From Dendrobates tinctorius (taxonomy: Eukaryota): a stretch of DNA of 64,000 bases. Numbering within the stretch: position 1 is the stretch's first letter; every line of letters starts with the position of its first letter. The notes under the pieces are model-generated. The model was not told where the DNA came from and ran no database searches. It worked only from the letters and a program-made list of their open reading frames with translations. The stretch spans positions 620,001-684,000 of the forward strand of contig NW_027362024.1 in NCBI RefSeq assembly GCF_039654945.1. The letters run 5' to 3'. The position numbers and the translations under genes are program-made. Shown one piece after another: positions 3,001-63,382 of the stretch.

Positions 3001-3019
3001 CCTCAAGACTCTTCCCCTA

Positions 3020-3692
3020 GTATGCATGTATCCCTCATCCCTATCCTGGTATGCATGACCCCATCATCCCTATCCTGGTATGCAGGGCCCCATCTCGTCC
3101 TGGTATGCATGGCCCCATCTCGTCCTGGTATGCAGGGCCCCATCTCGTCCTGGTATGCATGGTCCCATCTCGTCCTGGTGTGCATGGCCCCATCTCGTCC
3201 TGGTATGCAGGGTCCCCATCTCGTCCTGGTATGCATGGTACCATCATCCCTATCCTGGTATGCATGGTCCCATCCCTATCCTGGTATGCATGGCCCGTCA
3301 TCTCATCCTAGTATGCATGTATCCCTCATCCCTATCCTGGTATGCATGACCCCATCATCCCTATCCTGGTATGCAGGGCCCCATTTTGTCCTAGTATGCA
3401 TGGCCCCATCTCGTCCTGGTATGCAGGGCCCCATCTCGTCTTGGTATGCATGGCCCCATCTCGCCCTGGTATGCATGGTCCCATCTCATCCTGGTGTGCA
3501 TGGCCCATCTCATCCTGGTATGCAGGGCCCCATCTCGTCCTGGTTTGCATGGTACCATCATCCATATCCTGGTATGCATGGTCCCATCCCTATCCTGGTA
3601 TGCAGGGTCCCCTATCTCCTCCTAGTATGCATGGTACTATCATCCCTATCCTGGTATGCATGTCCCCATCCTTATCCTGGTATGCATGGCCC
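3020..3692. repeat. ~29-bp minisatellite (TCCTGGTATGCATGGCCCCATCTCG-like)
   Basis: More than 20 degenerate tandem units are visible. The array resumes at 4557 after an LTR insertion. Confidence 0.9.
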
Positions 3693-4556
3693 TGTAGGAG
3701 GAAGGACCGGAACAATAAAGGCAACAGTGTGGGAATGCCACTAGTGTGGCAGGGGAACAGAGAACCTGACCGGGACAGACCTGTGACCTCTGCTGCAAAG
3801 GGCGAGTCTGATATAAAAAGGGGGGTGCGCTGGAACCTGGGGCTTCTGGCGGGAAGACAGGAGGTGCAGCAGAGGAAGGTTTGCTCCCTCCCTGCGGATA
3901 ACACTACTGACGACAAACTGCGCTTGTGTGCGCACCCCCCAACATCCAGCAACAGCACCAGTGACCACTTACTGCTGCCGGATGCCGACCCTACGCGACT
4001 GCAGGCAGGAAGCGCTGACCATACTGTGCAACGCTTAACAGCAGACAGTGTAGAGTGCATGACTCCCGTCGGAGACTTTCACTTTACATCTGCGGCTGCG
4101 GCCTTGATACTAGAACCCTCCACCTCATCTGGACATACAGCAGCCCACCAAAAGGTCCCGGACTCTTCTTCGCCGCTAAGAGACAGCGCCTCCGGTACAT
4201 CGAGGACCGCTTCCTCAACGTGACGCGGCGTCTGCGGCGCCATCGTGGAATCTTTCAACCACCTCCCTTCGGACAACAGAGTCTGATAAGTTGAACCCTA
4301 CCGTTTTTTCCTCTCCCGCCGTTAGCAATTCTTTTTTTGTTGTTACCACTGTTGACAGCTGAAGTCAAGCTGTCACTGCATAATACTGAACTTCCACATA
4401 TTTGCCCGCCCAATACTTCTGTGCATCTTGTATATATTAACTCCCTGCATGGAGAAAGCGTTGTTATCTTTTCCTCTGGGTATATAAAAACACCCATTAA
4501 CACTTGCTCTGTTTTCTGCTCGTCACTGCATCCAACGCACCTGCTGGTAGCCTACA
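3693..4556 (+). mobile_element. solo LTR (864 bp)
   Basis: TGTAGG...CCTACA inverted ends, 4-bp TSD GCCC (3689-3692 / 4557-4560), TATA-like ATATAAAA near 3811. Inserted in the minisatellite. Confidence 0.75.
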
Positions 4557-4599
4557 GCCCCATCCCGTCCTGGTATACAGGGCCCCATACTTATAAGTG

Positions 4600-5372
4600 G
4601 CCCCCACCCCCATTCCTATCCTGGTATGCATGGCCCTATCAGAAAACATTAAAAAAACAAACCATTACACTTACCTACCCGGCGCTCCCTTGCAGCCTCC
4701 TGCTCCGGTGCCAGCAACTGCTTTATGCTTGTAAGCAGCGCTGAGAACAGTGAGAATTCATGAATATTCATTTCTCTTACGTAGTGGCACACGTGACCGC
4801 CAGTAGCAGCAGGAAGCCGGTGGCTGACACTGCGCGCTACTGAAGAGCAATGAATACTCACTGTCCTTTGTGTCCACAGTCCTGGCAGCTGTGCTCTGCT
4901 TGTGAGCAGTACATGACGTCCCTGCCATGCGCTGCTTACAAGCATATAGCAGTTCCTGGCACCAGAGCAGGACGCTGCGAGGGAGCACGGGGTAAGTAAG
5001 TGTAATGATTTGTTTTTTAATGTTTTCTGATGGGGCCATGCATACAAGGATTTGGATGGGAGCCAATTATAAGGATGGGGCCATGCATACCAGGACCGAG
5101 GTGGGGGGTGTAATCAGATCAAGATACTATTATTAAAGAGAAATGAATATTCATTGCCCTTCAAGCCCATGGGAGTGGAATGCAGTGAATATTAATTTCT
5201 CTTTAGCAGCGGGAACAGGAGTTAGCCGCAGCCACCGGCTCCAGCCTCCTGTGACCCGATGCTCCGCCGATGCCGTTCCCCCACCTACCCATCATAGCCA
5301 GAGTCGGTACATCCGGACTATAAGATGTACCCCCCATTTTCCTCAAGCATCTTATAGTCCGAAAATTATGCT
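4600..5372. mobile_element. non-autonomous palindromic DNA element (MITE-like; Tc1/pogo-type end)
   Basis: About 130-bp imperfect inverted repeat (4615-4741 vs 4929-5052). The right end CTTATAGTCCGAAAA (~5350-5366) resembles the ends of the MITEs at 31113 and 56416. Confidence 0.6.
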
Positions 5373-5955
5373 ACTTTTAACACAAATTGAAAAGTCAGGA
5401 TAAAGAGAAACTCTGCTGTTATTGTACAGAAATTCACACTCGGCCTCACTGCACATTTACTGTTGTCGATCATAAAAGGGAAGTTTGGCCAGAAAGACTG
5501 GACCTGGTCTTGTAGGGACCATGAGACATTCAGCAGCACAGAAGGGAGAGAAGATTCATCCGATAAGATCTCAGGGATCTAGGAAGCCAACAGCATCATT
5601 ACCCTCCGCTTTCTCTTACAGGCCCATCATAATATTTTTCTTCAAGGGATTTTCTAACCTGTCAGCACATTCTACGTACGCTGTCATTAGGCTTTATAGT
5701 TACAGATCTGGGCAGGTAACGGTCAGCGTCTCCTAATCACAGGGGTTAGGTGGATCCTCCAGGTTGTAAGTTCTATAGAAAAGGGCTTTCAATGCCCAAA
5801 GTCATTTGAACAATTTTGGGTGGAGGAGAATGTTGAGGTCTAGAGGCAAAATGGTGATCATGGTAATACGGCTGGACTACACCACCGTTAAAGCAGCCAC
5901 AGCCGGTGACTGAGAGGAATCTGTGACTTCTCTGCATTCAGTGGTTACTACTCAC

Positions 5956-7091
5956 CTGGGTAGTCATATGTGGGAATCTCCTCTTTACACCGCTCATCAC
6001 CCCTCACATATGTCTCTGTAGTATTAATATGGGTCAGATCTTCTCCCTGAAACAAATATTGTAAAAGTCACCGACAGATAGAGAAGTCCCATCTATGATC
6101 AGCTCTAATCCTGCCATCTCCACCGCTCTCATTACACAAGTATAAAACATATAATACTGGTGGATAAAACAAGACTGAGCACAAGACCTTCACAGCCGTC
6201 TACACATCATAGGGGAGATCTCCTGACACCTTCTCTCCATCTACCTGATGATCCTGAGGAGCACTGGGATCTTCTTGGTTACAGTCCTGTGGAAGAAGAG
6301 GACGGGGACATCTCTCTGGTGTTGTCCTCTTACTGGATAGATCTGGAGGAAACACATACAGGGACTGAATTCATTCTCTACATACAGATAATTATAGGCC
6401 GTGTGTATTTAGTCCTGTCTATTACCTGGTGATGTGAGGGGCTGGGGAACCTCCATTATGACGTTCTTGTGCAGATCTCTGTGTCCTTCTAAATACTCCC
6501 ACTCCTCCATGGAGAAATAGACAGCGACATCCTGACACCTTATAGGAACCTGACACATACAATGATACCGTCATCCCCCCGATCCCTTCATAGTGTTACT
6601 GTATAATGTCACAGCATTCCCAGCAGTGTCACCTCTCCAGTCAGCAGCCCAGTCATCTTGTAGGTGAGGTCTAGGATCTTCTGGTCATTGATGTCCTCAT
6701 GGATCAGGGGGTGAGGTGGAGGCCCCGTGATTGGGCTCAGGGGTCTTCCACATCCCTCAGACACAGGGTCCTGAAAGCGATCACTAGAGGTCTTCTTCAT
6801 CACTGTGTAATCCTGGTTATGGAGAGACACATTAATAAATCTCACTACAGACATTTCCAGAGTCCTCACCTCTCCAGTTCTGTCCATCTGTTATTCCCAT
6901 AGATAAGAATGATGTAATGTGACGTCATCAGAATCTCTCACCTCTCCAGTGAGACGGAAGAGGATCTCTAGGGTGAGGAGTAATATCCTCTCCGCCATGT
7001 TGTCTCTGTCCATATCCATCCTTGATGGGGAAATCAGGAAAATTCTCTTTTGTAGAAGATCTTCACTGAGAGGATCCGATATTGTAGAGAC
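5956..7091 (-). CDS. KRAB/FAX zinc-finger gene N-terminal exons, copy A: 7091-6942, 6812-6633, 6549-6426 (KRAB-A), 6342-6245, 6046-5956; finger exon expected left of the window
   Basis: All exons are open with GT/AG sites and the same lengths as the + strand gene (150, 180, 124, 98, 91 nt). KRAB-A reads [33 protein letters not shown]. Confidence 0.88.
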
Positions 7092-7144
7092 CTGAATGAG
7101 AAGAAGATGATCCGATGTAACATCATAAGAATCCTGTGTAATAA

Positions 7145-7873
7145 TACAACGACAGCTGCAATCTGCAGAGTCGGGAGATATGACTCTGACAAATATATAT
7201 ATACATACATACACATATCTATCTATATATATAATTTCACCAAAAAAAGTAAGGACTGCAGCACTCACTGATCCATATTGAAAGTCCGTAGTTTATTTGT
7301 AGCAAAAGTGTAAAACTTCATGGCCGGGAGGCTGAAGAAAGGAGTGAGCAAACTCTGACGACGGCCTAACAGCGCTTCCACGGGTCAGCTATATATAATC
7401 GTCTAATTCTGTCTGTCTGTAACGGAAATCCCGCATCGCTGATTGGTTGCGTCTGGGGACATCACTGAAGGTGGAGGAAGATGGCGCCCGCAGCAGTCCT
7501 CCACTGAAACTTCAACGATGTGCCCTGCCTTAACTTGAGCAGAGGGCGAAAACCCCCCGGTCAGCAAGGGGCAAGCCTAAGGCAGGACGCAGATGCTGTT
7601 CAGAAGGAAATCTCCACACCGCCCGAACACCGGGTAGCGGTGATGTCACCACAGAGTAGGAAGATGGCGCGTGCAGCAGGCAGAGACGGAACCTTCACCA
7701 GCGGTGTGCCCATGGAAAACAAGGTCAGATGAGGGTCCAGCCCCCCAGGTCTGCAAGGGGCAATCCCAAAGTCGATCCCAGAAGCTTTTCCAAAGCAATT
7801 TTCTACACTACCCGAACATATATATTTGGCAGAGTCATAACTCACGACTCTGCAGATTGCTGCTGCCGTTGTA
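7145..7873. repeat. segment bounded by ~55-bp inverted repeats, probably Penelope-like terminal remnant
   Basis: 7145-7200 is the imperfect reverse complement of 7818-7873. A deleted hammerhead-like motif lies at 7357-7388. Confidence 0.45.
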
Positions 7874-8744
7874 GGCCCAGACCAGATGGTATAGAGATGA
7901 ATGAGGGAGACCAAAGTTCAAAATAGACTTTCCTTTATTTAACAAGACCTTGATGAGAAGTATACACATTGTTAGCGAGGGTAGTCTGGAGCCGGAAACT
8001 CCAGGAGTGGACCCTCTGGACCGTGGCACCGAGGGGCCCCGGGCGAGCTGCCAGGTGGAACCGACCCCTATACAGGGACCGTTAGGAGCAGGCCCAGGGG
8101 TTCGAGTACCACGGTAGCCGGTACTGAGAGGGGCGGCTCAGGATGGACCGGAGTAGGACTGTGGGACAGAAGTATAGATGACGGAACAGGAACACTGGAG
8201 GCAGGACTGGAGTAGGACGGCAGGACTGGAGTAGGATGGAACAGGAACACTGGAGGCAGGACTGGAGTAGGACGGCAGGACTGGAGCAGGATGGAACAGG
8301 ACCACTGGAGGACGGCAGGACTGGAGTAGGATGGAACAGGAACACTGGAGACAGGACTGGAGTAGGATGGCAGGAACACCGGAGACAGGACTGAGAGGCT
8401 GCTGCGGAGAGCAGGCAAGAACGGAACTGCAGGAGCTGAGAGCACACGATGCAGCGAGGCCAGTGTGCTTGGAAACACAACAATCAGGCACCTCCCACAG
8501 GGGGAAGCGGCCTGATATGCTCCTGTCTGGTCTGCCATTGGTCAGGGAGGTGCTTCCAGGTCAGGGCATAGCCAGAGCACAAGAAGCTGGAGGGAGGCGC
8601 GGCCGCGGCCTATGGCGCATGCGCATTGCATGCAGGGATGCCGCCGACCGCGCACCTGCCAGAGGCGACCTACGTGGATGTCGGGCAGCGGGGGGCTGTG
8701 GCGTGGGAGCGATGGCCGGGTGAGTACGCAGGGACGGTGTAACA

Positions 8745-10960
8745 GTACCCCCTCCTCTAAGTCGCCCTCCCCGGACATTAGCAAGAAATCTCTTGAGGAT
8801 ACGGGGAGCATTGATATTCTCCTGAGGCTCCCAGGATCTCTCCTCAGGACCAAAGCCCTTCCAGTCAACAAGGAAAAATGTCCTACCTCTAACCTTCTTC
8901 ATGGCGATAATGTCCTCCACTTCAAAGACATCATCGGCACCCACCGGCTGAGGACCAGAAGCAGGCAAGGAATGGAAGCGATTCAGCACCACAGGTTTCA
9001 GGAGAGAGACATGGAAGGTGTTCGGGACCCGGAGCGAAGCAGGCAACCTCAATTTGTAGGCGACTTCATTGATACGTCCAAGAATTTCAAACGGACCGAT
9101 GTAGCGTGGCCCCAACTTGTAAGAAGGCAGTTTCAACCGGATGAATTTGGATGAGAGCCAGACCTTGTCCCCAACACGATAGGGTGGAGGATCCAATCTC
9201 TTCTTGTTGGCAAAGTTCTTCATCCGATCAGCGGATTTCTTGAGTGACGTGTTGGTCTCGGCCCAGATCTTGGAAAACTTGGAGGACAAAGGGTTGGCCG
9301 CGGGTACCTCGGAGGCAGGAGTTATCGGAAGAGGAACACCAGGATGTCTGCCGAACACAATGAAAAACGGAGACTTGGCCGAGGACTCACTGGCATGGTT
9401 GTTGTAAGCGAACTCTGCCCAGGGAAGTAAGTCAACCCAATCGCTCTGGTGTGCGTTGGAGAAATGACGTAGGTACCCAGTCAACGTCTGGTTGGTGCGC
9501 TCCACCTGCCCATTGGACTGTGGATGGTAGGCTGAGGAGAAGTCAAGGGAAATGTTCATGAGCATACAAAGCGATCGCCAGAACTTGGAGGTAAACTGAA
9601 CCCCTCGGTCCGACACTATGCGTTGAGGTAGTCCATGGAGTCTGAAGATTTGGTGGACAAAGACTTTAGCCAGCTCCGGAGCCGAGGGAAGAGCGGGCAG
9701 AGGGACGAAGTGGGCCATCTTGGAAAAACGATCCACCACCACCAAGATGACTGTGCAGCCAGAAGAACAGGGGAGGTCTGTTCGAAGAGACATTTCTCAA
9801 TCTTCGCATACAGGCGGTTCTCCCGAAGACGCTGTAACACCAAGCGGACACTCTTTCTGTGGGACAAGATATCCGGCGAGAAGACGAGGATGTCGTCCAA
9901 GTATACGACCACACAGGAGTACAAGAGGTCCCGGAAGATCTCATTGACGAACTCTTGAAACACCGCAGGAGCATTGCAGAGGCCAAAGGGCATGACCAGG
10001 TACTCGTAATGGCCGTCTCGAGTGTTGAAAGCCGTCTTCCACTCGTCTCCAGCCCGGATGCGGACCAGATTATAGGCTCCTCTGAGGTCCAGCTTGGAGA
10101 AGACCCGGGCTCCTCTAAGACGATCAAACAGCTCCAGAATGAGTGGAAGGGGTACCTGTTCTTAATGGTAATTTCATTCAGACCCCTATAGTCAATGCAT
10201 GGCCGTAGAGCTCTGTCCTTCTTTTTGACGAAGAAAAACCCGGCTCCCGCGGGTGACGAGGATTTCCGTATAAAACCCTTGGCAAGGTTCTCTCGAACGT
10301 ATTCGGACATAGCTGTGGTCTCAGCGGGAGACAGGGGGTAGATTCTGCCCCTTGGGGGAGTTGAACCAGGAACAAGTTCAATTGGGCAGTCAAAAGGCCG
10401 GTGTGGAGGAAGGACCTCCGCTTCCTTCTTATCAAAGACATCGGCGTAGGAACTGTAGGCTGGAGGAAGACCCAGAAGGTCTGGGAGCGGCCTAGGAGCG
10501 GCCACCAGGTGGACAGGAATCAGACAGCGAGCTTGGCACTGGTGCCCCCAGCGGAGTATCGCCCCAGAAGACCAATCGAGGACAGGCTGATGAGTCCTTA
10601 ACCATGGGAGACCGAGTAGAATGGCATGGGAGAGCTTAGGCAAAACGTAAAAGGCTATCTTCTCTCGATGTAAGGCACCAACTTGCAACTCCACTTCCTC
10701 AGTGACCAAGGTGACGGTCACCTGTAGCGGTTTGCCATCCACCGCGGCAATCTGGAGAGGGTTAGATAGGGCAACCACGGGAAATTGGTATTTGTCCACC
10801 TCTTCTGGCCGAATGAAGTTACCTGCCGAACCCGAATCCACGTAGGCCACCTCGGACCCACGTCTCTCCCCGGAAACCAGAAGCACAGAAATAGTAAGAG
10901 GTTGAGAGGGACCATCGTCGCCTAGGGAGGCCTCTCTTACCAGACCTAGGCGGAGGAGTT
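8745..10960 (-). pseudogene. pol: Gypsy pol: protease, partial RT, integrase + chromodomain
   Basis: ORF pieces 9666..10886, 9616..9993 and 8561..9793. Motifs VDRFSK, SDRG, QSNGQVER and chromodomain FLVDWKGFGPEERSWEP. Confidence 0.93.
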
Positions 10961-11946
10961 TCCCTGTCTCTTAGGACAGGTGCGGATATAGTGCGATGAA
11001 GCTCCGCAATAGAGGCACAGACCTTGTGCCCGCCTCTCTTGCTGACGTACCTCGTGAAGTTGAGACGGTCAATCTGCATGGGCTTGACTGACTGAGGACT
11101 GGCAGAACGGATGCAAAAGGGGACTGGCCTGGTGAATCTCCTCTCTCTCGCTGACTCCCGAGCGCGCTCCTGGAAGCGTAGGTCAATGCGGGTAGCCAGC
11201 GAAATAAGGTCCTCTAATGAGTTCGGGGTCTCTCGACCTGCGAGTTCATCTTTTATTCTGCCTGAAAGACCGCGCCAGAACGCCCCTACCAAAGCCGTGT
11301 TATTCCAGCCGAGCTCGGAGGAGATAGTGCGAAAGCGAATAGCGTACTGACCGACCGTGAGAGAACCCTGATGTAGATTAAAGAGTGATTCAGTGAGGAC
11401 AGCTAACCGACCCGACTCATTGAAGACCCTGCGAAAAGTATCCAAGAAAACCGGAAGACTCGAGACAACGGGATCGTCACGTTCCCAGAGGGGATTCAAC
11501 CAGGACAGGGCCTCTCCCTCCAGATGGGACATAATGAAGGCTACTTTGGCCCGGTCAGAGGGATATTGCTGCGGCAACAATTCAAAGTGGAGACTACACT
11601 GATTTAAGAACCCCCTGCAACGCTTAGGATCCCCAGTGAAGCGAGGCGGGGTGTTGGGAGAGCTGTAGGAGCGGGGGGAGGAGTCAGAGCTGCGGCGGCA
11701 GAACATAGGGCCGACAGGCGGCTATCAAAGGAGGCCATGTGAGACAAAATATGACGCTTGGGTATCTTGTTGCTGGACCAGCTCCTGTTGAAGACTGGTC
11801 AGTAACGTGGCAGTTCCAGGATCGGTCACCTGCAGGGCCGACAAACGGGTGTCCATGGACTTCATGATGGACATAATGCGTCCCTGATTTTCCCGCAGGA
11901 AGAGTAACTCTTTCTGGGTGGCAGCTGTGGTACCGGCGGGATCCAT
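10950..11946 (-). pseudogene. gag: Gypsy gag (frameshifted) with CCHC knuckle
   Basis: ORFs 11725..11946 and 10819..11706 (RFTGDPKRCRGFLNQC, QGSLTVGQYAIRF). GLCLYCGASSHYIRTCP lies in a shifted frame near 10975-11025. Confidence 0.88.
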
Positions 11947-13567
11947 GGCCTGATTGTACTGTTAGCGTGGGTAGTCTGGAGCCGGAAACTCCAGGAGTGG
12001 ACCCTCTGGACCGTGGCACCGAGGGGCCCCGGGCGAGCTGCCAGGTGGAACCGACCCCTATACAGGGACCGTTAGGAGCAGGCCCAGGGGTTCGAGTACC
12101 ACGGTAGCCGCTACCGAGAGGGGCGGCTCAGGATGGACCGGAGTAGGACTGTGGGACAGAAGTATAGATGACGGAACAGGAACACTGGAGGCAGGACTGG
12201 AGTAGGACGGCAGGACTGGAGTAGGATGGAACAGGAACACTGGAGGCAAGACTGGAGTAGGACGGCAGGACTGGAGCAGGATGGAACAGGACCACTGGAG
12301 GACGGCAGGACTGGAGTAGGATGGAACAGGAACACTGGAGACAGGACTGGAGTAGGATGGCAGGAACACCGGAGACAGGACTGAGAGGCTGCTGCGGAGA
12401 GCAGGCAAGAACGGAACTGCAGGAGCTGAGAGCACATGATGCAGCGAGGCCAGTGTGCTTGGAAACACAACAATCAGGCACCTCCCACAGGGGGAAGTGG
12501 CCTGATATGCTCCTGTCTGGTCTGCCATTGGTCAGGGAGGTGCTTCCAGGTCAGGGCATAGCCAGAGCACAAGAAGCTGGAGGGAGGCGCGGCCGCGGCC
12601 TATGGCGCATGCGCATTGCATGCAGGGACGCCGCCGACCGCGCACCTGTCAGAGGCGACCTACGTGGATGTCGGGCGGCGGGGGGCTGCGGCGTGGGAGC
12701 GATGGCCGGGTGAGTACGCAGGGACGGTGTAACACACATCAGATGGCAGGCACAACACTTTATTAATGCTTCTTCTGCATTATGCAGTCAGGAACTTTCC
12801 GGTGACATGCGGCAGTACATAACCTTTGTTATAAGCCACAATAGTGCAGCAAACCTGAGCTACTGACCTCTTCCTGCTCTGTGTCTCCGCTATGCTCCCT
12901 GCCTGGAATCCGAATTCTTACTGCCATTATATCTTTGCTTTCCTTCAGAACGTACTATCTGATGTCTCTCTCCTGGCACACAACACCATATCAATTCAGG
13001 AGGACGGCAATCAGATAGACCAAAGGCCTGGATTTCTCACTTTCTATCTGACTCATCACAAGGAAATTGTTCTCCTGTGTGGCCATGTAGCTCAGTATGA
13101 GGTCTCCCACACAGTATGACGGCCCCACAGCACCTCACACAGTATTATGGCGCGAGATGAGCAAATATTTCAATGTTCGGTTCAAGATCGCCGAATTTGC
13201 AATATTTGCCGATTTAATCGCAGAATATAGCGGAAAATGCACAGCACAAAAGCCGGTGTTTCCCAAGCTGTGTGGCAGTGTGGTAAACACTGATGTAGCG
13301 CTTCTGATTGGTGGTAAAATCATCCCTGCCGGTCACAGAGCCGCGGTTCACACACTGTCAGAACACAGCATGACCGCTCAGCTGTGATCGGAAGTAAAAA
13401 GTTTATCTCCGGTCACTGGTGTCACCTCTAATCCTGCCATCTCCACCGTTCTCATTACACAAGTATAAAACATATAATACTGGTGGATAAAACAAGACTG
13501 AGCACAAGACCTTCACAGCCGTCTACACATCATAGGGGAGATCTCCTGACACCTTCTCTCCATCTAC

Positions 13568-16500
13568 CTGATGATCCTGAGGAGCACTGGGATCTTCTTG
13601 GTTACAGTCCTGTGGAAGAAGAGGACGGGGACATCTCTCTGGTGTTGTCCTCTTACTGGATAGATCTGGAGGAAACACATACAGGGACTGAATTCATTCT
13701 CTACATACAGATAATTATAGGCCGTGTGTATTTAGTCCTGTCTATTACCTGGAGATGTGAAGGGCTGGGGAACCTCCATTATGACATCCTTGTACAGATC
13801 TCTGTGTCCTTCTAAATACTCCCACTCCTCCATGGAGAAATAGACAGCGACATCCTGACACCTTATAGGAACCTGACAAATACAATGATACCGTCATCCC
13901 CCGATCCCTTCATAGTGTTACTGTATAATGTCAGTCTGTCATTCCAAGGATGTCGTTCTAAGGATAACATCTGAAATATGCCTGAAAATGACTCCCTGCT
14001 ATAGATGCTTCATTATTATTATTACTATGCTTCACTATTACTATCACTCTGACAATCGATCTGCTTCATCCACAGGTATGTGTTCTGGCTGCAATACCAT
14101 CATCACCCATCTTTCCGAAATCCCAATCACCCCAATATCTGTCTGCTATCTATGGTATGTGTTCTGGCTGCAATACCATCATCACCCATCTTTCCTGAAC
14201 CCCAATCACCCCTGTATCTGTCTGCTATCAATGGTATGTGTCCCGGCTGCAATACCATCATCACCCATCTTTCCGGAACCCCAATCACCCCTGTATCTGT
14301 CTGCTATCAATGGTATGTGTCCCGGGTGCAATACCATCATCACCCATCTTTCCGGAACCCCAATCACCCCTGTATCTGTCTGCTATCAATGGTATGTGTT
14401 ATGGCTGCAATACCATCATCACCCATCTTTCCTGAACCCCAATCATCCCTGTATCTGTCTGCTATCAATGGTATGTGTCCCGGCTGCAATACCATCATCA
14501 CCCATCTTTCCTGAACCCCAATCACCCCTGTATCTGTCTGCTATCACTGGTATGTGTTCTGGCTGCAATACCATCATCACCCATCTTTCCTGAACCCCAA
14601 TCACCCCAGTATCTGTCTGCTATCTATGGTATGTGTTCAGGCTGCAATACCATCATCACCCAGCTTTCCTGAACCCCAATCACCCCTGTATCTGTCTGCC
14701 ATCACTGGTATATGTTATGGCTGCAATACTATCTCCCTTTGCATTTCCTCTTGTGACTTTAATTAATCGTCTCCTGTGTCTGCATCCAGTCTCCCTGCTG
14801 CACCTCCCTTTCTGATCACACCTGGGCCCTTTCATGTGCTGTTAAGTTAGTATAAATTCAGACTTAGAGGTCTGTCTGACCTCGGTCTGTCGTTGCAAGG
14901 ATGTCTTCTAAGGATAACATCTGAAATGAGCCTGAAGTGACCAGAAGGTACGACTAACCGCTGCATTTACATGTTCTAAATTTCTTTTGCCTTCTAAATT
15001 ACTCTCACCATGCTGACATACGCACTAACAGTTTTGGCTCCACTACTCACTCTCCATCGCTATCTGCAAACCCCAGCACCTGCTAACCAAATAATACTCT
15101 CTCCTTCCCTCTTGCCTCCCCACCTGACCTCCTCTGCTGACCTGCTCCTCGACCTCAGAGCTCTCCTAATAAAATACAAAACAAGCCACCAACCCTCCTT
15201 CTCCCATATGCTCTCCCTTTCTCTGCTTCTCCTCACTGCTGGTGACATATCTCCCAACCCTGGACCCCCACAGCCCATACCTCCCATCATTACCCCCTTC
15301 TATCATTTCCAAACCAACACAAACACCAGAAATCTTTCCCACCTCAAATCCGTGCCCTTGACACCCACCACCCTGTTTCCACTCTTTGGATCACTCTGGA
15401 ATGCCCGCTCCGTCTGCAATAAACTCCATGTGATTCCCAACCTCTTTACCTCTCGTAATTTTTCCTTCCTTGGCCTCACTGAAACATGGCTGACACCCTC
15501 CAACACAGCCTCCCCTGCTGTGCTAGGTTACGGCGGCCTCCACTTCATCCATACTCCTCGCCCTGGCCACAGACATGTCGGAGGAGTGGGCCTTCTCCTT
15601 TCTTCCAACTGCACCTTCAACCCAATCCCACCTCTTCCCTGCCTTGTCCTCCCCTCTTTTGAAGTCCACTCTGTCCGCATCTACTCTCCCTCCAACCTCC
15701 AAGTGGCCGTCATATACCGACCTCCAGGCCCGACCACTGCCTTCATTGACCAATTCTCCACCTGGCTCCTTCACTTTCTCTCCGCTGACATTCCCACCAT
15801 CATCATGGGTGACTTCAACATCCCCATTGACACCCAACATTCAGCAGCCTCCAAACTCATGTCCCTTACTTCATCTTTTGGACTCACTCAGTGGTCCTCC
15901 TCAGCCACCCACACAGACGGACATGCATACATTAGACCTGGCCTTCACCCGCCTCTGCTCTCTTTCTAACTTCACCACCTCCCATCTCCTATCTGACCAC
16001 CCTCTACTCAGTTTATCATCCCTGTCCACCTCACCTGTCACCGATGTCCAGAAGCATGCACACCCCCGCAGAAACCTCACACATCTAGACACTCGCACAC
16101 TCTCTGACTCTATTCTACCACTGTCCTCCATATCTTCACTCCACGACACTGACACTACCACTACTTTCTACAATGCCACTCTTGCATCAGCCATCAACTT
16201 GGTCGCCTGTTGTGAATTCGCTTTCTGGCCTGCTTTTGAGTACCCTAGGATCTGCGGTTTAGGCTGGTGAACTAAGACCTCAGGAGGCACCGCAGATCCT
16301 AGGGTACTCAAAAGCAGGCCAGAAAGCAAATTCACAACAGTTGTGGTCAGCCAGCCCCGGCGGGGGCTGTGCTGAATTTCCATCCTTATGTTACTGTTTG
16401 TGCCAGTTTGTTTTTGTCCCTTATTAGATTGGCCTCTTTTTGCTCTGCTTTCAGAATATACCAGAGTGCTGATATAGTGGGCGAAGTTTAGTGACTTCAG

Positions 16501-19500
16501 TATTTTTCCATCAGACGTGTTGGGCATTTTTTGCAGGGTTTTTTGCGTGATTGCAGACAGTGTCTTTCCATTCCTGTCCTGTCTAGTTAGTGTGGGCCCC
16601 ATCGTTTGCTCAGTCTATTTTCCTACCTGCATTTGTGTTTTCATCTTGTCTCACCGACAATATATGTTTGGGGGCTATCTATTCCTTTGGGGTCTGCTCT
16701 GGGGCAGTTTAGATTTCCCCTTTCTTGCTTTAGGCTTATTTAGTTCTCCGGCTGTGTCGAGGCGTCTAGGATCATCGTAGGTACGCTCCACGGCTACTGC
16801 TAGTTGTGTGGATAGCATCAGGGGTCTGCAATCCGCTTAGTTACCAACCTCTCTGGTTTTCTGTGGCTTAGCTTGGGCCTGCTCTCCTCCTCGGTGACCC
16901 AATCATAACAGTCGCCCCTGTCATGCATAACAGAGTGCGACGAATCAATAGACAACCCTGGCACAATAACACCACCAAAAAGCTTCGGCAAGCATCCAGA
17001 ATTGCAGAACGGCGCAGGAAGAAAACACATTCCCAAGACGACTTCACTGCACTCAAACAAACAACACTTGCATTCATATCGGCTCTCACCTCTGCTAAAT
17101 AGGCCTACTTTACATCCCTTGTATCTTCCTTATCCCACAACCCCAAACAGTTGTTCAATACTTTTAACTCCCTCCTCCGCCCACCACTGCCCCCTCGACT
17201 TCCCTAATCTCTGCCGAGGAATTTGCCGCACCACAACCCCTTTGTATACCAGACCAATGCCCAAACCCCATAACCTCCCTATATAACATCACTGAAGGGG
17301 AGCTTGCTCATCTTCTCTCCAAATCACACCTCACCACTTGTGCACTTGACCCTATCCCATCCCACCTCCTCCCCAACATCACCACCACCCTTATCCCCTC
17401 CCTAACCCACCTCTTCAACCTATCACTAACTTTGGGTACCTTCCCTTCTGCTTTCAAGCATGCCACAATCACACCTATCATTAAAAAGCCAACCCTCGAT
17501 CCAACAGCCACGTCCAGCTATTGCCCAATATCGTTGCTCCCATTCGCTTCTAAACTCCTGGAGCAGCATGTCCACACTGAATTTTCCACCCACCTCTCAT
17601 CTAACTTGCTCTTTGACAATCTACAATCTGGCTTCTGCCCCCATCATTCTACTGAGACAGCCCTGACCAAAATTACCAATGACCTACTTACAGCCAAAGC
17701 TAACCCACAATACTCTATACTCCTCCTTCTAGACCTGTCCTCTGCTTTCGACACAGTTGACAACTGCCTCCTACTACAGATCCTCCTCTGCCCACCACTG
17801 CCCCCTCCAACCTCCCTCATCTCTTCGCGCACACTTCAAAACCAAGATAGACCAAACACGGCATGTCTTTGTTGCTCAACCACCACAACCCCTTTGCACA
17901 CAAGACCAATGCCCAAATCCCATAACCTCCCTATCTAACATCACTGAAGGGGAGCTTGCTCATCTTCTTTCCAAATCACACCTTACCACTTGTGCACTTG
18001 ACCCTATGCCATCCCACCTCCTCCCCAACCTCACCACCACACTTATCCCATCCTTAACCCACCTCTTCAACCTATCACTAACTTCTGGTACCTTATCTTC
18101 TGCTTTCAAACATGCCACAATCACGCCTATCCTTAAAAAGCTAACCCTCGACCCAACAGCCATGTCCAGCTATCACCCAATATCGCTGCTCCCATTTGCT
18201 TCTAAACTCCTGGAGCAGCATGTCCACGCTGAACTTTCCTCCCACCTCTCATCTAACTTGCTCTTTGACAACCTACAATCTAGTTTCCGCCCCCATCACT
18301 CCACTGAGACAGCCCTGACCAAAATTACTAACGACTTACTTACAGCCAAAGCTAACGGACAATACTCTATACTCCTCCTTCTAGACCTGTCCTCTGCTTT
18401 CAACACAGTTGACCACTGCCTCCTACTACAGATCCTCTCCTCCTTCGGCATCAAAGACCTCGCCCTATCCTGGATCTCCTCATACCTCTCCAACTGCACA
18501 TTCAGCGTCTCCCACACTACCTCCTCATCCCACCCTCTCTCTGTTGGAGTCCCCCAAGGCTCTGTTCTAGGACCCCTACTCTTCTCAGTCTATACACTTG
18601 GCCTGGGGCAACTCAAAGTCCCACGGATTCCAGTACCACCTTTATGCCGATGATACTCAGATCTACCTCTCTGGCCAAGACGTCACCTCTCTGCTCTCCA
18701 GAATCCCAGAGTGTCTATCAGCCATATTCTCCGTCTTCTCCTCTCGCTTCCTCAAACTCAATGTGGACAAATCTGAACTAATCATCTTTCCCCCATCTCA
18801 AAGATCTTCCTTACCCGACCTTTCTATAACAATTGACATCACGCTTTCCCCCCTACCGGAGGTCCGCTGCCTCGGAGTAACCCTTGACTCTGCCCTGTTC
18901 TTCAAACCGCACATCCAAGCTCTCTCCACCTCCTGCCGCCTCCAGCTCAAAAATATTTCCAGAATCCATCCTTTCCTCAACCTGCTAAACTACTTGTGCA
19001 TGCCCTCATCATCTCCCGCCTCGACTATTGCAGCATCCTTTTCTGTGGCTTCCCTGCTAACACCCTTGCACCTCTCCAGTCCATCCTTAACTCTGCCGCC
19101 TGACTAATTCATCTCTCTCCTCACTACTCCTCCGCTTCTCCCCTTTGCAAATGTCTTCACTGGCTCTCATTCACTCAGCGTATCAAATTCAAATTACTAA
19201 TACTGACCTACAAGGCCATCTATAACCTGTCTCCTCCATATATCTCAGAACTAATCTCCCGATACCTTCCCTCACGTAATCTCTGGTCCTCCCAAGACCT
19301 CCTTCTCTCCTCCACACTTATTCACTCCTCACCCAACCGCTTCCAAGACTTCTCCCGAATAGCCCCCATCCTCTGGAATTCCCTGCCCCAACACGTCCGG
19401 CTATCATTCACACTCAGATCCTTCAGACGGAACCTGAAAACCCACCTCTTCAAAAAAGCCTACAGCCTGCAATGATCCCGCTGCCTCCTCATCACTACTG

Positions 19501-20207
19501 GAGCTACCGCCTAACCATCACTGGAGCTACTGCAACCCCCTAACCTACTGTCTCCTTCCCCACCATCCTGTAGCATGTAAGCCCAAAAGGGAAGGGTCCT
19601 CTCTCCCCTCTGTATCAGTCTGTCATTGTTAGTTTGCTTACTGTAAGTGATATCTGTAATTTGTATATAACTCCTTCTCATGTACAGCACCATGGAACCA
19701 ATGGTGCTCTATAAATAAATAATAATAATAATGTCCCAGCAATGTCACCTCTCCAATCAGCAGCTCAATCATCTTGTAGATGAGGTCTAGGTTCTTCTGG
19801 TGATTGATGTCCTCATGGATCAGGGGGTGAGGTGGAGGCCCCGTGATTGGGCTCAGGGGTCTTTCACATCCCTCAGACACAGGGTCCTGACAGTAATCAC
19901 TAGAGGTCTTCTTCACCACTGTGTAATCCTGGTTATGGAGAGACACATTAATAAATCTAACTACAGACATTTCCAGAGTCCTCACCTCTCCAGTTCTGTC
20001 CATCTGTTATTCCCATAGATAAGAATGATGTAATGTGACGTCATCAGAATCTCTCACCTCTCCAGTGAGACGGAAGTGGATCTCTAGGGTGAGGTGTAAT
20101 ATCCTCTCCGCCATCTTGTCTCTGTCCATATCCATCCTTGATGGGTAAATCAGGAAAACTCTCTTCTGTAGAAGATCTTCACTGAGAGGATCCGATATTG
20201 TAGAGAC
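13568..20207 (-). CDS. KRAB/FAX zinc-finger gene N-terminal exons, copy B: 20207-20058 (ATG 20135), 19928-19749, 13872-13749 (KRAB-A), 13665-13568
   Basis: Four open exons with intact splice sites. The intron after the 180-nt exon is expanded by an L2 insertion. Homology to the other copies stops at ~13427, so the 91-nt exon is absent. Confidence 0.85.
14075..14733 (+). repeat. 79-bp tandem repeat, ~8.3 copies, in the L2 5' region
   Basis: Unit GGTATGTGTTCTGGCTGCAATACCATCATCACCC... recurs at 14075, 14154, 14233 and so on to 14707. Confidence 0.92.
15190..15267 (+). other. 2A-like ribosome-skipping peptide upstream of the L2 APE domain
   Basis: [18 protein letters not shown] in ORF 15010..15969 matches the D(V/I)xxNPG/P signature. 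Confidence 0.75.
16208..16910. mobile_element. solo LTR (703 bp) nested in the L2
   Basis: TGTTGTGA...TCATAACA ends, 6-bp TSD GTCGCC (16202-16207 / 16911-16916). L2 sequence resumes after it. Confidence 0.85.
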
Positions 20208-21209
20208 CTGAATGAGAAGAAGATGATCCGATGTAACATCATAAGAATCCTGTGTAATAATACAATTACTGGAGATAATAAGGGAAACATATGAGATTTA
20301 TTATTTTACAGGGTTTAGTTTTCTCCCCTGACATCTACTAATAAAACCTATATATTTAGGCCACAGACAAGAAGTAGTTTCCTCCTCGGAGTCGGCAGCT
20401 GAACACGTTCCTCATAGACTCATCTTCCATAACGCTAATTCTCGTCTCATTACCGACACTGGAATCCGCATTAGCAATACTGCAGGAGATATTCATTACA
20501 CGCGACATGAGAAATAACTCCTTCATGATGAGGACGACATCTTCATCTTCTACTACGGCTCTAGAGACAGATTTGGCCAGAGTCGGTCACTGCCTCCATC
20601 CCCACCGGCCGTCTATATGAAGGTTTCCCGTCTTCCCCGCACTGGAATCTTCTATCCCGTTAGATCTCAGCTCTGAGTCACACACAGAAGTTTGAGGCTT
20701 TTAGAAAAGATTTTTAGTTTCCACAATCAACGCGGACAGAAATGATCTGATCCCAAAGTCTCCATGTACAGTGATTTATGGGGTTTATTTCTGGCCTTAG
20801 GCTTTCCTACATTACAAGAAAAACTCCAGAAAAAGCCGATATTAAAATGTTTCTCATGTGTATGGGGCCGTTAGTATTACACTGACAGGCAGTGATCATA
20901 CACGGCACTACAGTAGTACAGGGCATCACTGGAGCCATCAGAGGCTTGTATGTTGTATGATCGCACTGATCAGAGGGGTTTAAAAAAAGATTTAAAGTGG
21001 AAAAAAAATCACAGTTTCAGCAACAAGAAATATCCATTACTATATGGAAAGCAGAGTCACTGCACAATGTTAGTTACGTCACCTCCATAACTACTTTATT
21101 ATACTCTATTATCCTGTACACAGTGGAGTAGATAGAAATCACAGATCCCACAGCAATAGCTGGAATTGGACCCTCCAACGTAAAGAAAAAAAATCTCTCT
21201 ATCTATATA

Positions 21210-22435: not shown

Positions 22436-22576
22436 GATGTTGGGCTGTGAGCACAACCCCCATGGAGACACAATTGTGCCTTTACCTGGAGATAAATTCC
22501 CAGTGGGGGGCAATCTCCAAAATGCAATAACTTAAGTGGGGAATTCAGCTCTTTTCTCACTTAAGGGATCTGTATA

Positions 22577-24257: not shown

Positions 24258-24545
24258 CAGTGGCATGTAAAAGTGTGGGCGCCCCTGGTCAAAATGACCG
24301 TTATTGTGAGCAGTAGTAAGATGAAGATGAAATGATCTCTAAAAGGCCGAACCTCTAAGATGACACATGGCCTTTGTATTTTAGGCAACTATAATAATAA
24401 AAAAATATATAGACTTTTTTACAATTTCATAATTGCAAAAAGGAAAAAGGGCGATGCAAAACTTTGGGCACCTTTAGAGATTTGTGTACTGAGATAATTT
24501 TGATCAAGATTTCACACCTTAATTAGCTTGTTAGGGTTATGGTGA
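24258..24545 (+). mobile_element. Tc1-like left-end fragment
   Basis: CAGTGGCATGTAAAAGTGTGGGCGCCCC terminus with an internal direct repeat (GCAAAACTTTGGGCACC). Confidence 0.55.
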
Positions 24546-24558
24546 GATCACATGGTGA

Positions 24559-29585: not shown

Positions 29586-30125
29586 CTGCAGAGCCGCACT
29601 CCACATATATGGCTGCTCTGTGCACAGGACCTGTGATGAGGTCACAGGAGGGGAGGAGTCAGGGGTCACATGATCTCCGAAGTGCAGACCTCCATGGAGG
29701 CTTCTCCTCAGTCAGTGACATTCCCGCCATTATTCGCCCCTCACTACTGGCACAATTACCCCGCGCCGCCTTCTCTACACAGTGTTATGTGTGGAATGTA
29801 ACGTGTGATTTCTCTGGAGGGAAATAGACCCCACACAGGAGGGAATTCTCACCGGTTACCGGCCGTCTACTATATGGCGGCATATGATTGTGCTATCGAC
29901 TCCACACCAGGAGCTAAAATGCCCAAATCTCGGTTATTTCCCCCTTCCGAGTCCGGCTGAGGCCGGGGTCACACTTGGGAGAAACTCGCCCGAGTCTCGC
30001 ACCTCAGGGCCCTTGTGGATTATCCTCTGTAGGGGAAACGACACCGGCTGTCAGGGACAGGGGGCCCCAATATAAATCCAATATTCGTTGTAAGAAAACC
30101 CAACCTGATGCCGCCATTCGGGGTA
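29586..30125 (-). promoter_or_regulatory. candidate promoter/first exon of the minus-strand KRAB gene
   Basis: CpG-richer island with three YY1-like CCGCCAT motifs (~29724, ~29874, ~30111) and a donor-like CAG|GTTAGT at 29586/29585 on the minus strand. Inference only. Confidence 0.35.
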
Positions 30126-39461: not shown

Positions 39462-39820
39462 ATAAATCTCCGGTGTCCTTGATGTGAGCAGGTGCTATTC
39501 TCAGTAATGGTCTCAGACACCGGTCTATAAATGTAGATAAAGATTCTGTTACTGATCCAACCCCGCACACTATCGGGCGACCTGGTGGGGGCGCTGCGTC
39601 TTTGTGGACTTTAGGAATATAACACCAATGCGGCTTGTGTGGAAATTCAGGGAAGAGTTTCTCTGTTATTTCTTAGACAATCGTCCCTTCTCTATGTGAA
39701 ATCTCAGAGAAGATCTTAGTTGTTCCTTCTCGTTATTTGTGGGATCAGCGCTTGTTTTCCTATCTGCTGCTATCTGATCGCTGTCTTTCTGCTCCTTACT
39801 ATATTGTCCATTGCTACTAA

Positions 39821-63320: not shown

Positions 63321-63382
63321 CACCTGTAAAAAAAATTAAAATAATAAAGTAACCTACTGTATACTGACCTTTCTGCTGTAAT

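What the first reader, a model, noticed from the sequence alone, without database searches (positions are those of the whole stretch)
5956..20207. Intragenic duplication could build an in-frame double FAX/KRAB zinc-finger protein
Seen in sequence: copy B has the first four exons but loses homology at ~13427, before the 91-nt exon. Copy A has all five exons but loses upstream homology at ~7149, so it has no 5' end of its own. The last B exon (13665-13568) ends in phase 0. The first A exon (7091-6942) is 150 nt and fully open in that frame ([30 protein letters not shown]...), so normally 5' leader sequence becomes a linker. All nine exons are open with intact splice sites. Inference: one transcript B2-B3-B4-B5-A2-A3-A4-A5-A6-fingers with two tandem KRAB-A boxes, meaning a new repressor architecture rather than two pseudogenes.
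Basis: partly seen in the sequence, partly recalled or inferred. Interest (0 to 1): 0.72.

Follow-up and report, generated by a model that had tools for sequence, protein, structure and literature searches.

The report
Two-module KRAB zinc-finger gene, frog family
The two partial gene copies are the two tandem front modules of one poison-frog KRAB zinc-finger gene, a layout already annotated at sister loci, so it is an ordinary family member whose own transcript remains unproven.

Summary
Copies A (7149-5797) and B (20702-19734 plus 13932-13422) lie on the minus strand. Together they carry nine open exons with intact AG/GT sites, and B exon 5 to A exon 2 (13568 to 7091) is in frame.

The architecture is not new. 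The block e2-e5 is 552 nt and runs phase 0 to phase 0. Exon 2 is coding throughout in paralog models that start in an exon 1. Among 473 fetched family proteins from hyloid frogs, 141 carry this e5-to-e2 junction.

Two Dendrobates tinctorius loci (L005, L006) share A/B's duplication junction. NCBI models there (XP_073417660.1, XP_073422420.1) join e5 to e2 and end in a finger exon about 13 kb after e6. That distance explains why the window shows no finger exon.

For this copy the transcript is unproven:
- A 4.8-kb Ty3/gypsy element sits in the inter-module intron.
- The closest copy (L002, 98.7%) is annotated as two truncated genes.
- RNA contigs showed no 13568-to-7091 joint and, at two A-only sites, no A letter in two runs.
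- dN/dS is about 1 or higher.

An earlier first-reader note in this scan (s1-369625) raised the same idea on another piece of this genome. It has no follow-up.

The parts
29586..29606 (-). Exon 1b of the A/B gene: ATG, MWSAALQ, then a GT donor
   Evidence: Six-frame search and direct reading. The same start is used in P0394/P0213. An RNA contig in run X4 joins a paralog's version (..AALRVE) to e2.
24437..29136 (.). 110-bp satellite array (at least 42 units) inside intron 1
   Evidence: the repeat finder. The array holds the same position upstream of the first module in L004, L005 and L006, and is also matched in L002 and L003.
20500..20526 (-). Exon 1a (MKELFLMSR plus GT donor), upstream of B
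   Evidence: Exact match to C's copy at 45576-45602. It is the N-terminus of P0206; P0409 has the variant MKELILMSH.
20058..20207 (-). B exon 2 (150 nt, phase 0 to 0)
19749..19928 (-). B exon 3 (180 nt, phase 0 to 0)
13934..19733 (+). LINE fragment inserted in B intron 3, antisense to the gene, with internal tandem repeats
   Evidence: Gap between the two B homology pieces. RVT_1 ORFs at 17733-18650 and 18571-19104. The insert is also present in L002, L005 and L006.
13749..13872 (-). B exon 4, KRAB box
   Evidence: Pfam PF01352, E 5.5e-10
13568..13665 (-). B exon 5 (98 nt), ends in phase 0, donor GT at 13567
12735..13421 (-). Spacer X2, which replaces the rest of B's intron 5 and exon 6
   Evidence: Homology to A and C stops at 13422. 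X2 is unique in the window. The same sequence follows the first module in L002, L005 and L006.
7970..12734 (-). Ty3/gypsy chromovirus LTR retrotransposon, in the sense orientation of the gene, inside the inter-module intron
   Evidence: 775-bp LTRs with 10 differences, TG..CA ends and a 5-bp duplication ATGTG. Gag, protease, integrase and chromodomain ORFs. Present in L002; empty site in L005 and L006.
7145..7873 (.). 729-bp element with 56-bp terminal inverted repeats, flush with A's 5' breakpoint, with no target duplication
   Evidence: Window 3016-7969, which contains it, aligns colinearly to L005 and L006.
6942..7091 (-). A exon 2. Only 58 nt of the family's upstream intron is kept, including the pyrimidine tract and the AG.
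6633..6812 (-). A exon 3
6426..6549 (-). A exon 4, KRAB box
   Evidence: Pfam PF01352, E 8.2e-9
6245..6342 (-). A exon 5
5956..6046 (-). A exon 6 (91 nt), ends in phase 1 and needs a finger exon beyond the window's left edge
   Evidence: There is no C2H2 motif on the minus strand in 1-5955 apart from one isolated chance match.
3016..5955 (-). Start of intron 6, colinear with the paralogs L005 and L006
2..2911 (-). LINE: an unassigned ORF at 2078-2911, then an endonuclease plus reverse-transcriptase ORF at 2-1942 that runs off the left end
45576..47032 (+). Copy C: exon 1a (45576-45602), e2 45898-46047, e3 46177-46356, e4 46439-46562, e5 46646-46743, e6 46942-47032. This is the single-module neighbour gene, head to head with A/B.
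61251..62188 (+). C's finger exon (8 C2H2 fingers, NAGNAG acceptor at 61251/61254)
   Evidence: 308 of 311 residues identical to P0279, a 501-aa single-module D. tinctorius model.

Best explanation
A and B are the two tandem N-terminal modules of one multi-module KRAB zinc-finger gene. It belongs to a large, young gene family of poison frogs (Dendrobates tinctorius or a very close relative).

Inferred transcript:
- It starts at exon 1b (29606) or exon 1a (20526).
- It runs through B e2-e5.
- It splices from 13568 to 7091 into A e2-e6.
- It ends in a C2H2 finger exon left of the window, about 13 kb after e6 in the paralogs.

Why the frame holds (shown): e2-e5 totals 552 nt and runs phase 0 to phase 0. 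In paralog models that start in an exon 1, e2 is coding over its whole length. Any tandem copy of the block therefore stays in frame. The product would carry two copies of [N-terminal box + KRAB-A] ahead of the fingers.

The duplication is not private to this locus (shown). The same junction (B end, spacer X2, spacer X1 with an inverted-repeat element, A start) occurs in at least three other loci of the D. tinctorius assembly. At two of them, NCBI gene models use the e5-to-e2 splice.

In the lineage of this copy and L002, a 4.8-kb Ty3/gypsy element later landed in the inter-module intron (shown).

Whether the joint is still used here, and whether the two KRAB boxes recruit more TRIM28, is inferred and not shown.
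For: - Exon anatomy, frames and splice sites are intact. KRAB boxes are present in both e4 copies.
- Both exon 1 types are intact upstream of B.
- L005 and L006 are colinear with window 3016-29136 at 94-97% and share the same junction. They lack only the LTR element.
- All nine module exons located in L005 translate to P0394 (XP_073417660.1, 689 aa), which places e5 (ending 25296) next to e2 (starting 27032). Its finger exon lies at about 41.5-43.0 kb. P0394 residues 1-400 give two KRAB stretches.
- Family-wide, 141 of 473 fetched proteins have the e5-to-e2 junction. 150 have two KRAB exons before the fingers and 25 have three.
- The 24-residue linker is conserved across Dendrobates, Ranitomeya and Anomaloglossus models.
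- RNA contigs show every canonical junction of the family, plus an exon 1b-to-e2 junction.
- The arrangement is not a mis-join: the same order is found in L002, L005 and L006.
Against: - The closest copy (L002, 98.7%) carries the same LTR element. NCBI annotates it as two units. P0073 ends by read-through into intron 5 just after B' e5. A separate 317-aa gene has its coding start between A' e5 and e6. In L002 the A' e2 donor is TT, not GT.
- On 5300-8000, none of the 15 joints shown goes back from 6245 to 7091. A-only letters at 7030 and 6649 are absent from the contigs of X1 and X4. The tables are truncated and contigs drop rare variants.
- dN/dS is 0.95-2.2 for all copy pairs, so no purifying selection is visible.
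- The finger exon is outside the window.
- All double-module proteins are computed gene models. I could not see their RNA support.
Confidence: 0.5

Rival explanations
1. The two-module gene is broken in this lineage. After the Ty3/gypsy element landed between the modules, B transcripts end shortly after e5. A e2-e5 are idle and drifting. Only e6 plus the fingers are expressed, from a new start.
For: - L002 shares the LTR element and is annotated in this way: P0073 ends in intron 5, and a 317-aa gene starts between A' e5 and e6.
- In L002 the A' e2 donor is TT.
- A versus A' dN/dS is 0.95 and B versus B' is 1.15.
- A-only letters at 7030 and 6649 are missing from the contigs of X1 and X4.
Against: - In the window all nine exons and all splice sites are intact.
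- The LTR has no AATAAA or ATTAAA on the gene's strand.
- An annotated family member, P0210 at L001, splices across an inter-module intron of about 29 kb.
- dN/dS near or above 1 seems general in e2-e3 of this family, so it does not single out A or B.
Confidence: 0.3
2. The double-module proteins are artefacts of gene prediction. Gene finders chain in-frame exons of neighbouring partial copies, and no such mRNA is made at any locus.
For: - Every double-module protein found is an NCBI or submitter model.
- Despite very high summed contig depth over the family's exons, no e5-to-e2 joint or loose end appeared among the rows shown.
Against: - Two separate annotation sources (XP_ and KAM accessions) give the same architecture in several species.
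- L005 carries isoforms that differ only at a NAGNAG acceptor (P0394 versus P0213). From what I know of NCBI's pipeline, such isoforms usually come from transcript alignments.
- The linker stays open and similar across genera.
- RNA shows exon 1b joined to e2, so the 5' part of e2 lies inside an open reading frame.
Confidence: 0.12
3. The locus is transcribed as one unit but makes mainly single-module proteins by skipping. Examples are exon 1 to A e2, or B e5 to A e6. Both are in frame.
For: - All module exons except e4 and e5 are phase 0 to 0, and B e5 ends in phase 0 as A e6 requires.
- Annotated paralogs show mixed joints: e3-to-e2 in P0409, P0004 and P0005, and e6-to-e2 in 57 proteins.
Against: No reads bear on this. 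It does not exclude the best explanation.
Confidence: 0.1
4. The A/B arrangement is an assembly error, such as a haplotype mis-join.
For: The copies are 96-98% alike and sit in a repeat-rich region.
Against: - The same order of A, inverted-repeat element, spacer, B with its LINE, and satellite is found in three separate contigs of GCA_039654945.1.
- The LTR element has a clean 5-bp target duplication, with an empty site in the paralogs.
Confidence: 0.02

Closest known systems
NCBI gene models XP_073417660.1 / XP_073417661.1 (locus L005) and XP_073422420.1 (locus L006), Dendrobates tinctorius, 'uncharacterized protein'
   Same: - Same order: satellite, first module with the LINE in intron 3, X2, X1 with the inverted-repeat element, second module e2-e6.
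- Same breakpoints.
- The first module is B-like ([13 protein letters not shown]..).
- The e5-to-e2 junction has the [18 protein letters not shown].. linker.

   Different: - 94-97% identity to the window.
- No Ty3/gypsy element in the inter-module intron, which is 1.7 kb in L005 against 6.5 kb here.
- The second module is closer to the window's C than to A.
- Their finger exon is known; this locus's is not.
Locus L002 (JAYMGB010000370.1) with XP_073419037.1 (P0073) and a neighbouring 317-aa gene
   Same: It is the nearest copy: 98.7% over window 7202-22577 and colinear over the whole window. It has A', B', C', the same LTR element and the same LINE.
   Different: - It is annotated as two truncated genes, not one.
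- The A' e2 donor is TT.
- Its copy of C's finger exon is only 87% identical to the window's.

Human ZNF274 (two KRAB domains plus SCAN plus fingers)
   Same: It has two KRAB boxes N-terminal to a C2H2 array. Regions containing either box bind KAP1/TRIM28 in vitro (PMC2999557). KRAB zinc-finger proteins are described as having 'one or two KRAB domains' (PMC11458898).
   Different: It is a mammalian protein with a SCAN domain. From my own knowledge, not tested here, it does not derive from a recently repeated multi-exon module, and no 2-to-6-fold module series has been described for it.
Xenopus XFIN KRAB-AB
   Same: It is an amphibian KRAB box shown to repress transcription and bind TRIM28 (PMC3912051). 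A frog KRAB/TRIM28 system therefore exists.
   Different: XFIN has A and B subdomains. Here only e4 matches the KRAB profile, and e5 gives no Pfam match.
Xenopus FAX (finger-associated box) zinc-finger proteins, XlCOF / XlCGF series
   Same: NCBI names several family members 'oocyte zinc finger protein XlCOF..-like' or 'gastrula zinc finger protein XlCGF..-like'. These are frog-specific N-terminal boxes ahead of the fingers.
   Different: I had no FAX profile and no paper in the held library to test against. e2 and e3 give no Pfam match.

Membership tests
KRAB C2H2 zinc-finger proteins | KRAB-A box at the N-terminus | tested here: met
   PF01352 above its cut-off in e4 of A (35.4 bits), B (39.1 bits) and C (39 bits).
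KRAB C2H2 zinc-finger proteins | C2H2 finger array in the same transcript | not testable with these tools
   There is no finger exon on the minus strand in 1-5955. Paralogs L005 and L006 have one about 13 kb after e6. L002 has a gene continuing past A' e6. The left neighbouring window was not available.
KRAB C2H2 zinc-finger proteins | KRAB-B box | tested here: not met
   e5 and e6 give no Pfam match at E up to 1. This looks like a KRAB-A-only type. The feature is not required for membership.
KRAB C2H2 zinc-finger proteins | TRIM28/KAP1 recruitment and repression | not tested
   This needs a bench assay.
Multi-module (e2-e5 repeated) frog KRAB zinc-finger genes as annotated by NCBI | Two or more e2-e5 blocks in the same orientation, with an in-frame e5-to-e2 junction and the conserved 24-residue linker | tested here: met
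   The frame and the linker [24 protein letters not shown] are confirmed. Homologous linkers occur in P0009, P0011, P0012, P0083, P0206 and P0213. 141 of 473 fetched proteins carry the junction.
Multi-module (e2-e5 repeated) frog KRAB zinc-finger genes as annotated by NCBI | Same duplication junction as annotated members | tested here: met
   L005 and L006 align through B's end, X2, X1 with the inverted-repeat element and A's start without a break, apart from the LTR empty site.
Multi-module (e2-e5 repeated) frog KRAB zinc-finger genes as annotated by NCBI | A transcript that uses the e5-to-e2 joint at this locus | tested here: inconclusive
   No such joint appears among the rows shown for four runs of contigs. 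The tables are truncated, the contigs are about 100 nt long, and paralogs pile up on the exons.
Xenopus FAX-domain zinc-finger proteins | FAX box consensus in the N-terminal region | not testable with these tools
   No profile exists in Pfam for e2 or e3, and no paper is in the held library. Only NCBI's XlCOF/XlCGF-like names point that way.

The most novel reading that the evidence does not exclude
The e2-e5 block may be a phase 0-to-0 'plug-in' repressor module that hyloid frogs multiply inside genes. Annotated models carry 2 to 6 copies in Dendrobates, Ranitomeya, Phyllobates, Anomaloglossus and Eleutherodactylus; Bufo gargarizans has a doubled e2-e4 block and Engystomops a model covering the double region. 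Its e2-e3 part diverges several times faster than the adjacent introns across all sampled copies. That would point to selection on the number and sequence of KRAB-bearing modules, for example to tune TRIM28 recruitment or to escape an antagonist. Mere annotation noise or gene conversion would then not be the whole story.
Probability: 0.25. Interest if true: 0.6.

Novelty: new member of a known kind. Interest (0 to 1): 0.33.

Why it matters
For this locus, little: it is one more copy, possibly decaying, of a gene type already present in RefSeq.

For the family, more. Hundreds of frog gene models carry two to six tandem KRAB modules built from a block that keeps the reading frame. I found no paper describing this. 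If the mRNAs are real, they offer a natural series for asking whether the number of KRAB boxes changes TRIM28 recruitment and repression strength. They would also show how zinc-finger repressor families diversify at the effector end as well as at the fingers.

Tried and rejected
- The repeat finder on 1-30000 was swamped by the 110-bp satellite. I used self-BLAST instead.
- RNA evidence: the runs are kept only as Logan contigs, and none is on record as RNA. Laid on 5300-8000, thousands of roughly 100-nt paralog contigs pile on the exons, so nothing could be assigned to this locus. The span from 13568 to 7091 exceeds the 6,000-letter limit. I therefore looked for a 'go back' joint (6245 to 7091) on the A stretch. 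None was among the 15 joints shown; 85 further joints and 409 further loose ends were not shown.
- The loose end CTCTGCGGGTGG upstream of e2 has no match within one mismatch in the window. It was later explained as a paralog's exon 1b (..AALRVE, as in P0210).
- The search of earlier findings by place and by sequence returned nothing.
- Literature searches for the FAX domain returned nothing usable. 'KRAB' plus 'poison frog' found no paper whose title or abstract concerns multi-KRAB genes; I did not open them.
- P0213 is not on record for locus look-up. P0409, on the same contig as C's counterpart, turned out to lie 1.8 Mb away.
- The third word search did not surface a model of the A/B counterpart next to L003, nor the 317-aa protein of L002. 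The finger exon downstream of A' was therefore not reached.
- Considered and rejected: assembly mis-join, because the same junction occurs in three other contigs. Also rejected: that the open linker is pure chance, because it is conserved as coding sequence.
- The breakpoint of L001's first module differs from B's. Not all double genes share one origin, or later insertions blur it.
Exons were searched one by one by reference, and the joined search was left out. Exons were concatenated only inside local scripts, for translation and dN/dS.

Full report
**What is in the sequence**

Self-BLAST of the window finds three copies of the 5' part of one gene.
- C lies on the + strand at 45400-47191.
- A lies on the - strand at 7149-5797 and equals C 45840-47191 at 97.9%.
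- B lies on the - strand in two pieces, 20702-19734 and 13932-13422.

B's pieces are separated by a 5.8-kb LINE fragment (13934-19733) sitting in intron 3. It carries reverse-transcriptase ORFs on the + strand.

- A: e2 7091-6942, e3 6812-6633, e4 6549-6426, e5 6342-6245, e6 6046-5956.
- B: e2 20207-20058, e3 19928-19749, e4 13872-13749, e5 13665-13568. B has no e6.

All acceptors are AG, all donors are GT, and all exons are open. B e5 ends in phase 0. A e2 read from its first base gives a 24-residue stretch followed by MDMDRD. Exon 4 is a KRAB box in all three copies.

The only C2H2 exon in the window is C's, at 61251-62188 on the + strand.

**What lies between and around the copies**

Between B and A, going down the minus strand, are four pieces:
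- 146 nt of B's intron 5.
- Spacer X2 (13421-12735), unique in the window.
- A Ty3/gypsy chromovirus (12734-7970). It has 775-bp LTRs with 10 differences, TG..CA ends and a 5-bp target duplication ATGTG. Its gag, protease, integrase and chromodomain ORFs lie on the gene's strand.
- Spacer X1, which contains a 729-bp element with 56-bp terminal inverted repeats (7873-7145). Its last base abuts A's homology, and it has no target duplication.

A keeps only 58 nt upstream of e2, enough for the pyrimidine tract and the AG.

Upstream of B there are two intact first exons, each with an ATG and a GT donor. Exon 1a (MKELFLMSR) is at 20526-20500; C has its own copy at 45576-45602. Exon 1b (MWSAALQ) is at 29606-29586, beyond a 4.7-kb array of a 110-bp satellite. 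A/B and C therefore sit head to head.

Left of A there is 2.9 kb of ordinary intron 6. After that comes a LINE in the sense orientation that runs off the window.

**The architecture is a family trait, not a new invention**

A profile-free search with A's e3 (60 residues, by reference) against 1.84 billion representative proteins gave 375 hits. Many had 2 to 6 matched stretches.

I mapped A's exons, one by one, onto the hits. This showed the order e2-e3-e4-e5-e2-e3-e4-e5-e6-fingers in models from these species:
- Anomaloglossus baeobatrachus (XP_075207195.1)
- Ranitomeya imitator (XP_069606596.1)
- Phyllobates terribilis (XP_073537591.1)
- Eleutherodactylus coqui (XP_066458345.1)

R. variabilis has a three-module model. 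Bufo gargarizans has a doubled e2-e4 block.

One example is VLTISNPLSGDLLYKRILLINQSR.

Two word searches spanning the junction found thousands of relatives. Among all 473 proteins fetched:
- 141 carry an e5-to-e2 junction.
- 150 have two KRAB exons before the fingers.
- 25 have three.

Several models start in an exon 1 (MWSAALQ.., MKELFLMSR), so e2 is coding from its first base in them. Exon 2 (150 nt) and exon 3 (180 nt) are each phase 0 to 0. The block e2-e5 is 552 nt and also runs phase 0 to 0. A tandem copy of the block is therefore in frame by construction.

RNA contigs support this. Run X4 has contigs that join a paralog's exon 1b (..AALRVE, as in P0210) to e2.

**Sister loci with the same junction**

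The nearest species is Dendrobates tinctorius, judged from these matches:
- C's e2 is 100% identical to several of its proteins.
- C's finger exon matches P0279 at 308 of 311 residues.
- Window 57550-64000 is 99.4% identical to L003.

The window is not identical to any locus I fetched from GCA_039654945.1. It is therefore another assembly, haplotype, paralog or very close species.

Three other contigs of that assembly carry the A/B arrangement.

*L005 and L006* are colinear with window 3016-29136 at 94-97%. The shared order is: satellite, upstream region, first module with the same LINE in intron 3, B's breakpoint, X2, X1 with the inverted-repeat element, second module e2-e6, and intron 6.
- They lack only the Ty3/gypsy element. 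The two flanking alignments abut at L005 26132-26137, which is an empty site.
- The nine module exons I located in L005 translate to P0394 (XP_073417660.1, 689 aa). That protein places e5 (ending at 25296) next to e2 (starting at 27032), then e6.
- Its finger exon lies at about 41.5-43.0 kb, roughly 13 kb after e6.
- Residues 1-400 of this protein give two KRAB stretches.

It is also expected that the window shows no finger exon. Other annotated members splice across even longer introns. P0210 at L001 has about 29 kb between modules and about 25 kb before the fingers.

*L002* is the closest copy: 98.7% over 15.4 kb and colinear over the whole window. It has A', B', C' and the same Ty3/gypsy element. 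There NCBI does not join the modules.
- P0073 (XP_073419037.1) runs from far-upstream exons through B' e3-e5. It then reads into intron 5 ([14 protein letters not shown], stop).
- A separate 317-aa gene has its coding start between A' e5 and e6 and continues past the locus end.
- The A' e2 donor is TT.

This is what one would expect if the LTR insertion had split the gene in this lineage. In the window, however, the A e2 donor is GT. The LTR also has no AATAAA or ATTAAA on the gene's strand.

**Reads**

All runs offered are kept as Logan contigs, and none is on record as RNA. I laid four of them on 5300-8000 (2,701 letters, within the operators' limit) at 92% likeness, so that B-type exons would also lay on A.

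The result:
- Thousands of roughly 100-nt contigs from many paralogs landed on the five exons.
- All canonical joints appeared: e2-e3, e3-e4, e4-e5 and e5-e6.
- A loose end after e6 reads like the start of a finger exon.
- An exon 1b-to-e2 loose end appeared.

No joint going back from 6245 to 7091 was among the 15 shown, and 85 were not shown. At two A-only sites (7030, 6649), every contig of X1 and X4 reads the other letter.

This gives no support for expression of A or for the B5-to-A2 joint here. Contigs drop rare variants, so it is not evidence of absence either.

**Selection**

By Nei-Gojobori counts on the in-frame exons, done in a local script:

| Pair | dN/dS |
|---|---|
| A-B | 1.8 |
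| A-C | 0.98 |
| B-C | 2.2 |
| A-A' | 0.95 |
| B-B' | 1.15 |

No purifying selection is visible.

A separate pattern stands out. Among A, B and C there are 28 differences in 552 exon bases against 7 in 493 intron bases (Fisher p = 0.0009). The excess is in e2-e3 (21/330 against 2/202, p = 0.003) and not in e4-e5.

In e2-e3 the same excess holds for nearly every pair among the 11 modules from five loci (for e4-e5, nine modules were comparable). Many variant letters are shared in a mosaic way between loci. Synonymous divergence (0.02-0.03) also exceeds intron divergence (about 0.01).

Gene conversion between paralogs, diversifying selection on the N-terminal box, or both would fit. The data cannot tell a live module from a dead one.

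**Verdict**

A and B are best read as the two modules of one gene, not as two independent pseudogenes, and the in-frame joint is the annotated splice at sister loci.

The architecture is a common, already annotated feature of this frog family, though I found it unstudied in the literature I could search. Two-KRAB zinc-finger proteins are also known in human (ZNF274, PMC2999557; 'one or two KRAB domains', PMC11458898).

For this particular copy, the state of the joint is open. I give about 0.5 that it is still used. I give about 0.3 that the LTR insertion lineage, to which this copy and L002 belong, has lost it.

An earlier first-reader note of this scan (s1-369625) made the same suggestion for another piece of this genome and has no follow-up.

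Exons were searched singly by reference, and the joined search was left out.

Noticed in passing
window 24437-29136: A 4.7-kb array of a 110-bp satellite (at least 42 units, mostly 94-100% alike). It lies inside intron 1 of the A/B gene, between exon 1b and exon 1a. It holds the same position upstream of the first module in L004, L005 and L006, and is also matched in L002 and L003.
   Followed up: partly
window 6633-7091, 19749-20207, 46047-46356 and the same exons in L001-L004: Exons 2-3 (the N-terminal box) differ 3 to 6 times more per site than the introns around them in nearly every pair among 11 modules, and the changes are mostly amino-acid changes. Exons 4-5 (KRAB) do not show this. Many variant letters are shared in a mosaic between loci, which suggests gene conversion, diversifying selection or both.
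   Followed up: partly
L002 72356-72357: In the closest sister locus, the donor of A' exon 2 is TT instead of GT. The window's A has GT at 6941-6940.
   Followed up: yes
window 34044-39464: A second LTR retrotransposon (611-bp LTRs, 98.7% alike, long ORFs on the minus strand). In L002 most of this stretch is missing: about 1.8 kb stands where the window has about 5.5 kb. It may therefore be a young, polymorphic or copy-specific insertion.
   Followed up: no
window 50798-53658: A pair of 800-bp direct repeats (97.9%) 2 kb apart. L002 has no counterpart for this stretch. It may be another LTR-type insertion.
   Followed up: no
window 42824-45008: A long tandem array upstream of C that stays open in several frames on both strands (for example repeated ..CTRCTERSRV..). 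A related array lies upstream of the P0210 gene in L001, at 4.1-5.9 kb.
   Followed up: no
window 61248-61256: The finger exon of C has a NAGNAG acceptor (tag|cag|). The models P0394 and P0213 at the sister locus differ by exactly this one residue (YDYPADDC against YDYPDDC).
   Followed up: partly
window 62186-62300: C's finger array ends at a stop codon that stands where a finger's glutamate codon would be. Two more degenerate fingers follow it out of the open frame.
   Followed up: no
window 47578-48348 (minus strand): An ORF with a weak GIY-YIG match just below Pfam's cut-off (possibly Penelope-like) lies about 390 nt past the point (47191) where the homology between C and A stops. A's side continues as family-typical intron 6 (matches L001, L004, L005), so C is the copy that was interrupted.
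   Followed up: partly
L002 10001-64169: NCBI's model P0073 starts about 47 kb upstream of B' e3, runs across the C' gene on the opposite strand, and skips B' e2. It looks like a low-quality model or an unusual read-through transcript.
   Followed up: no
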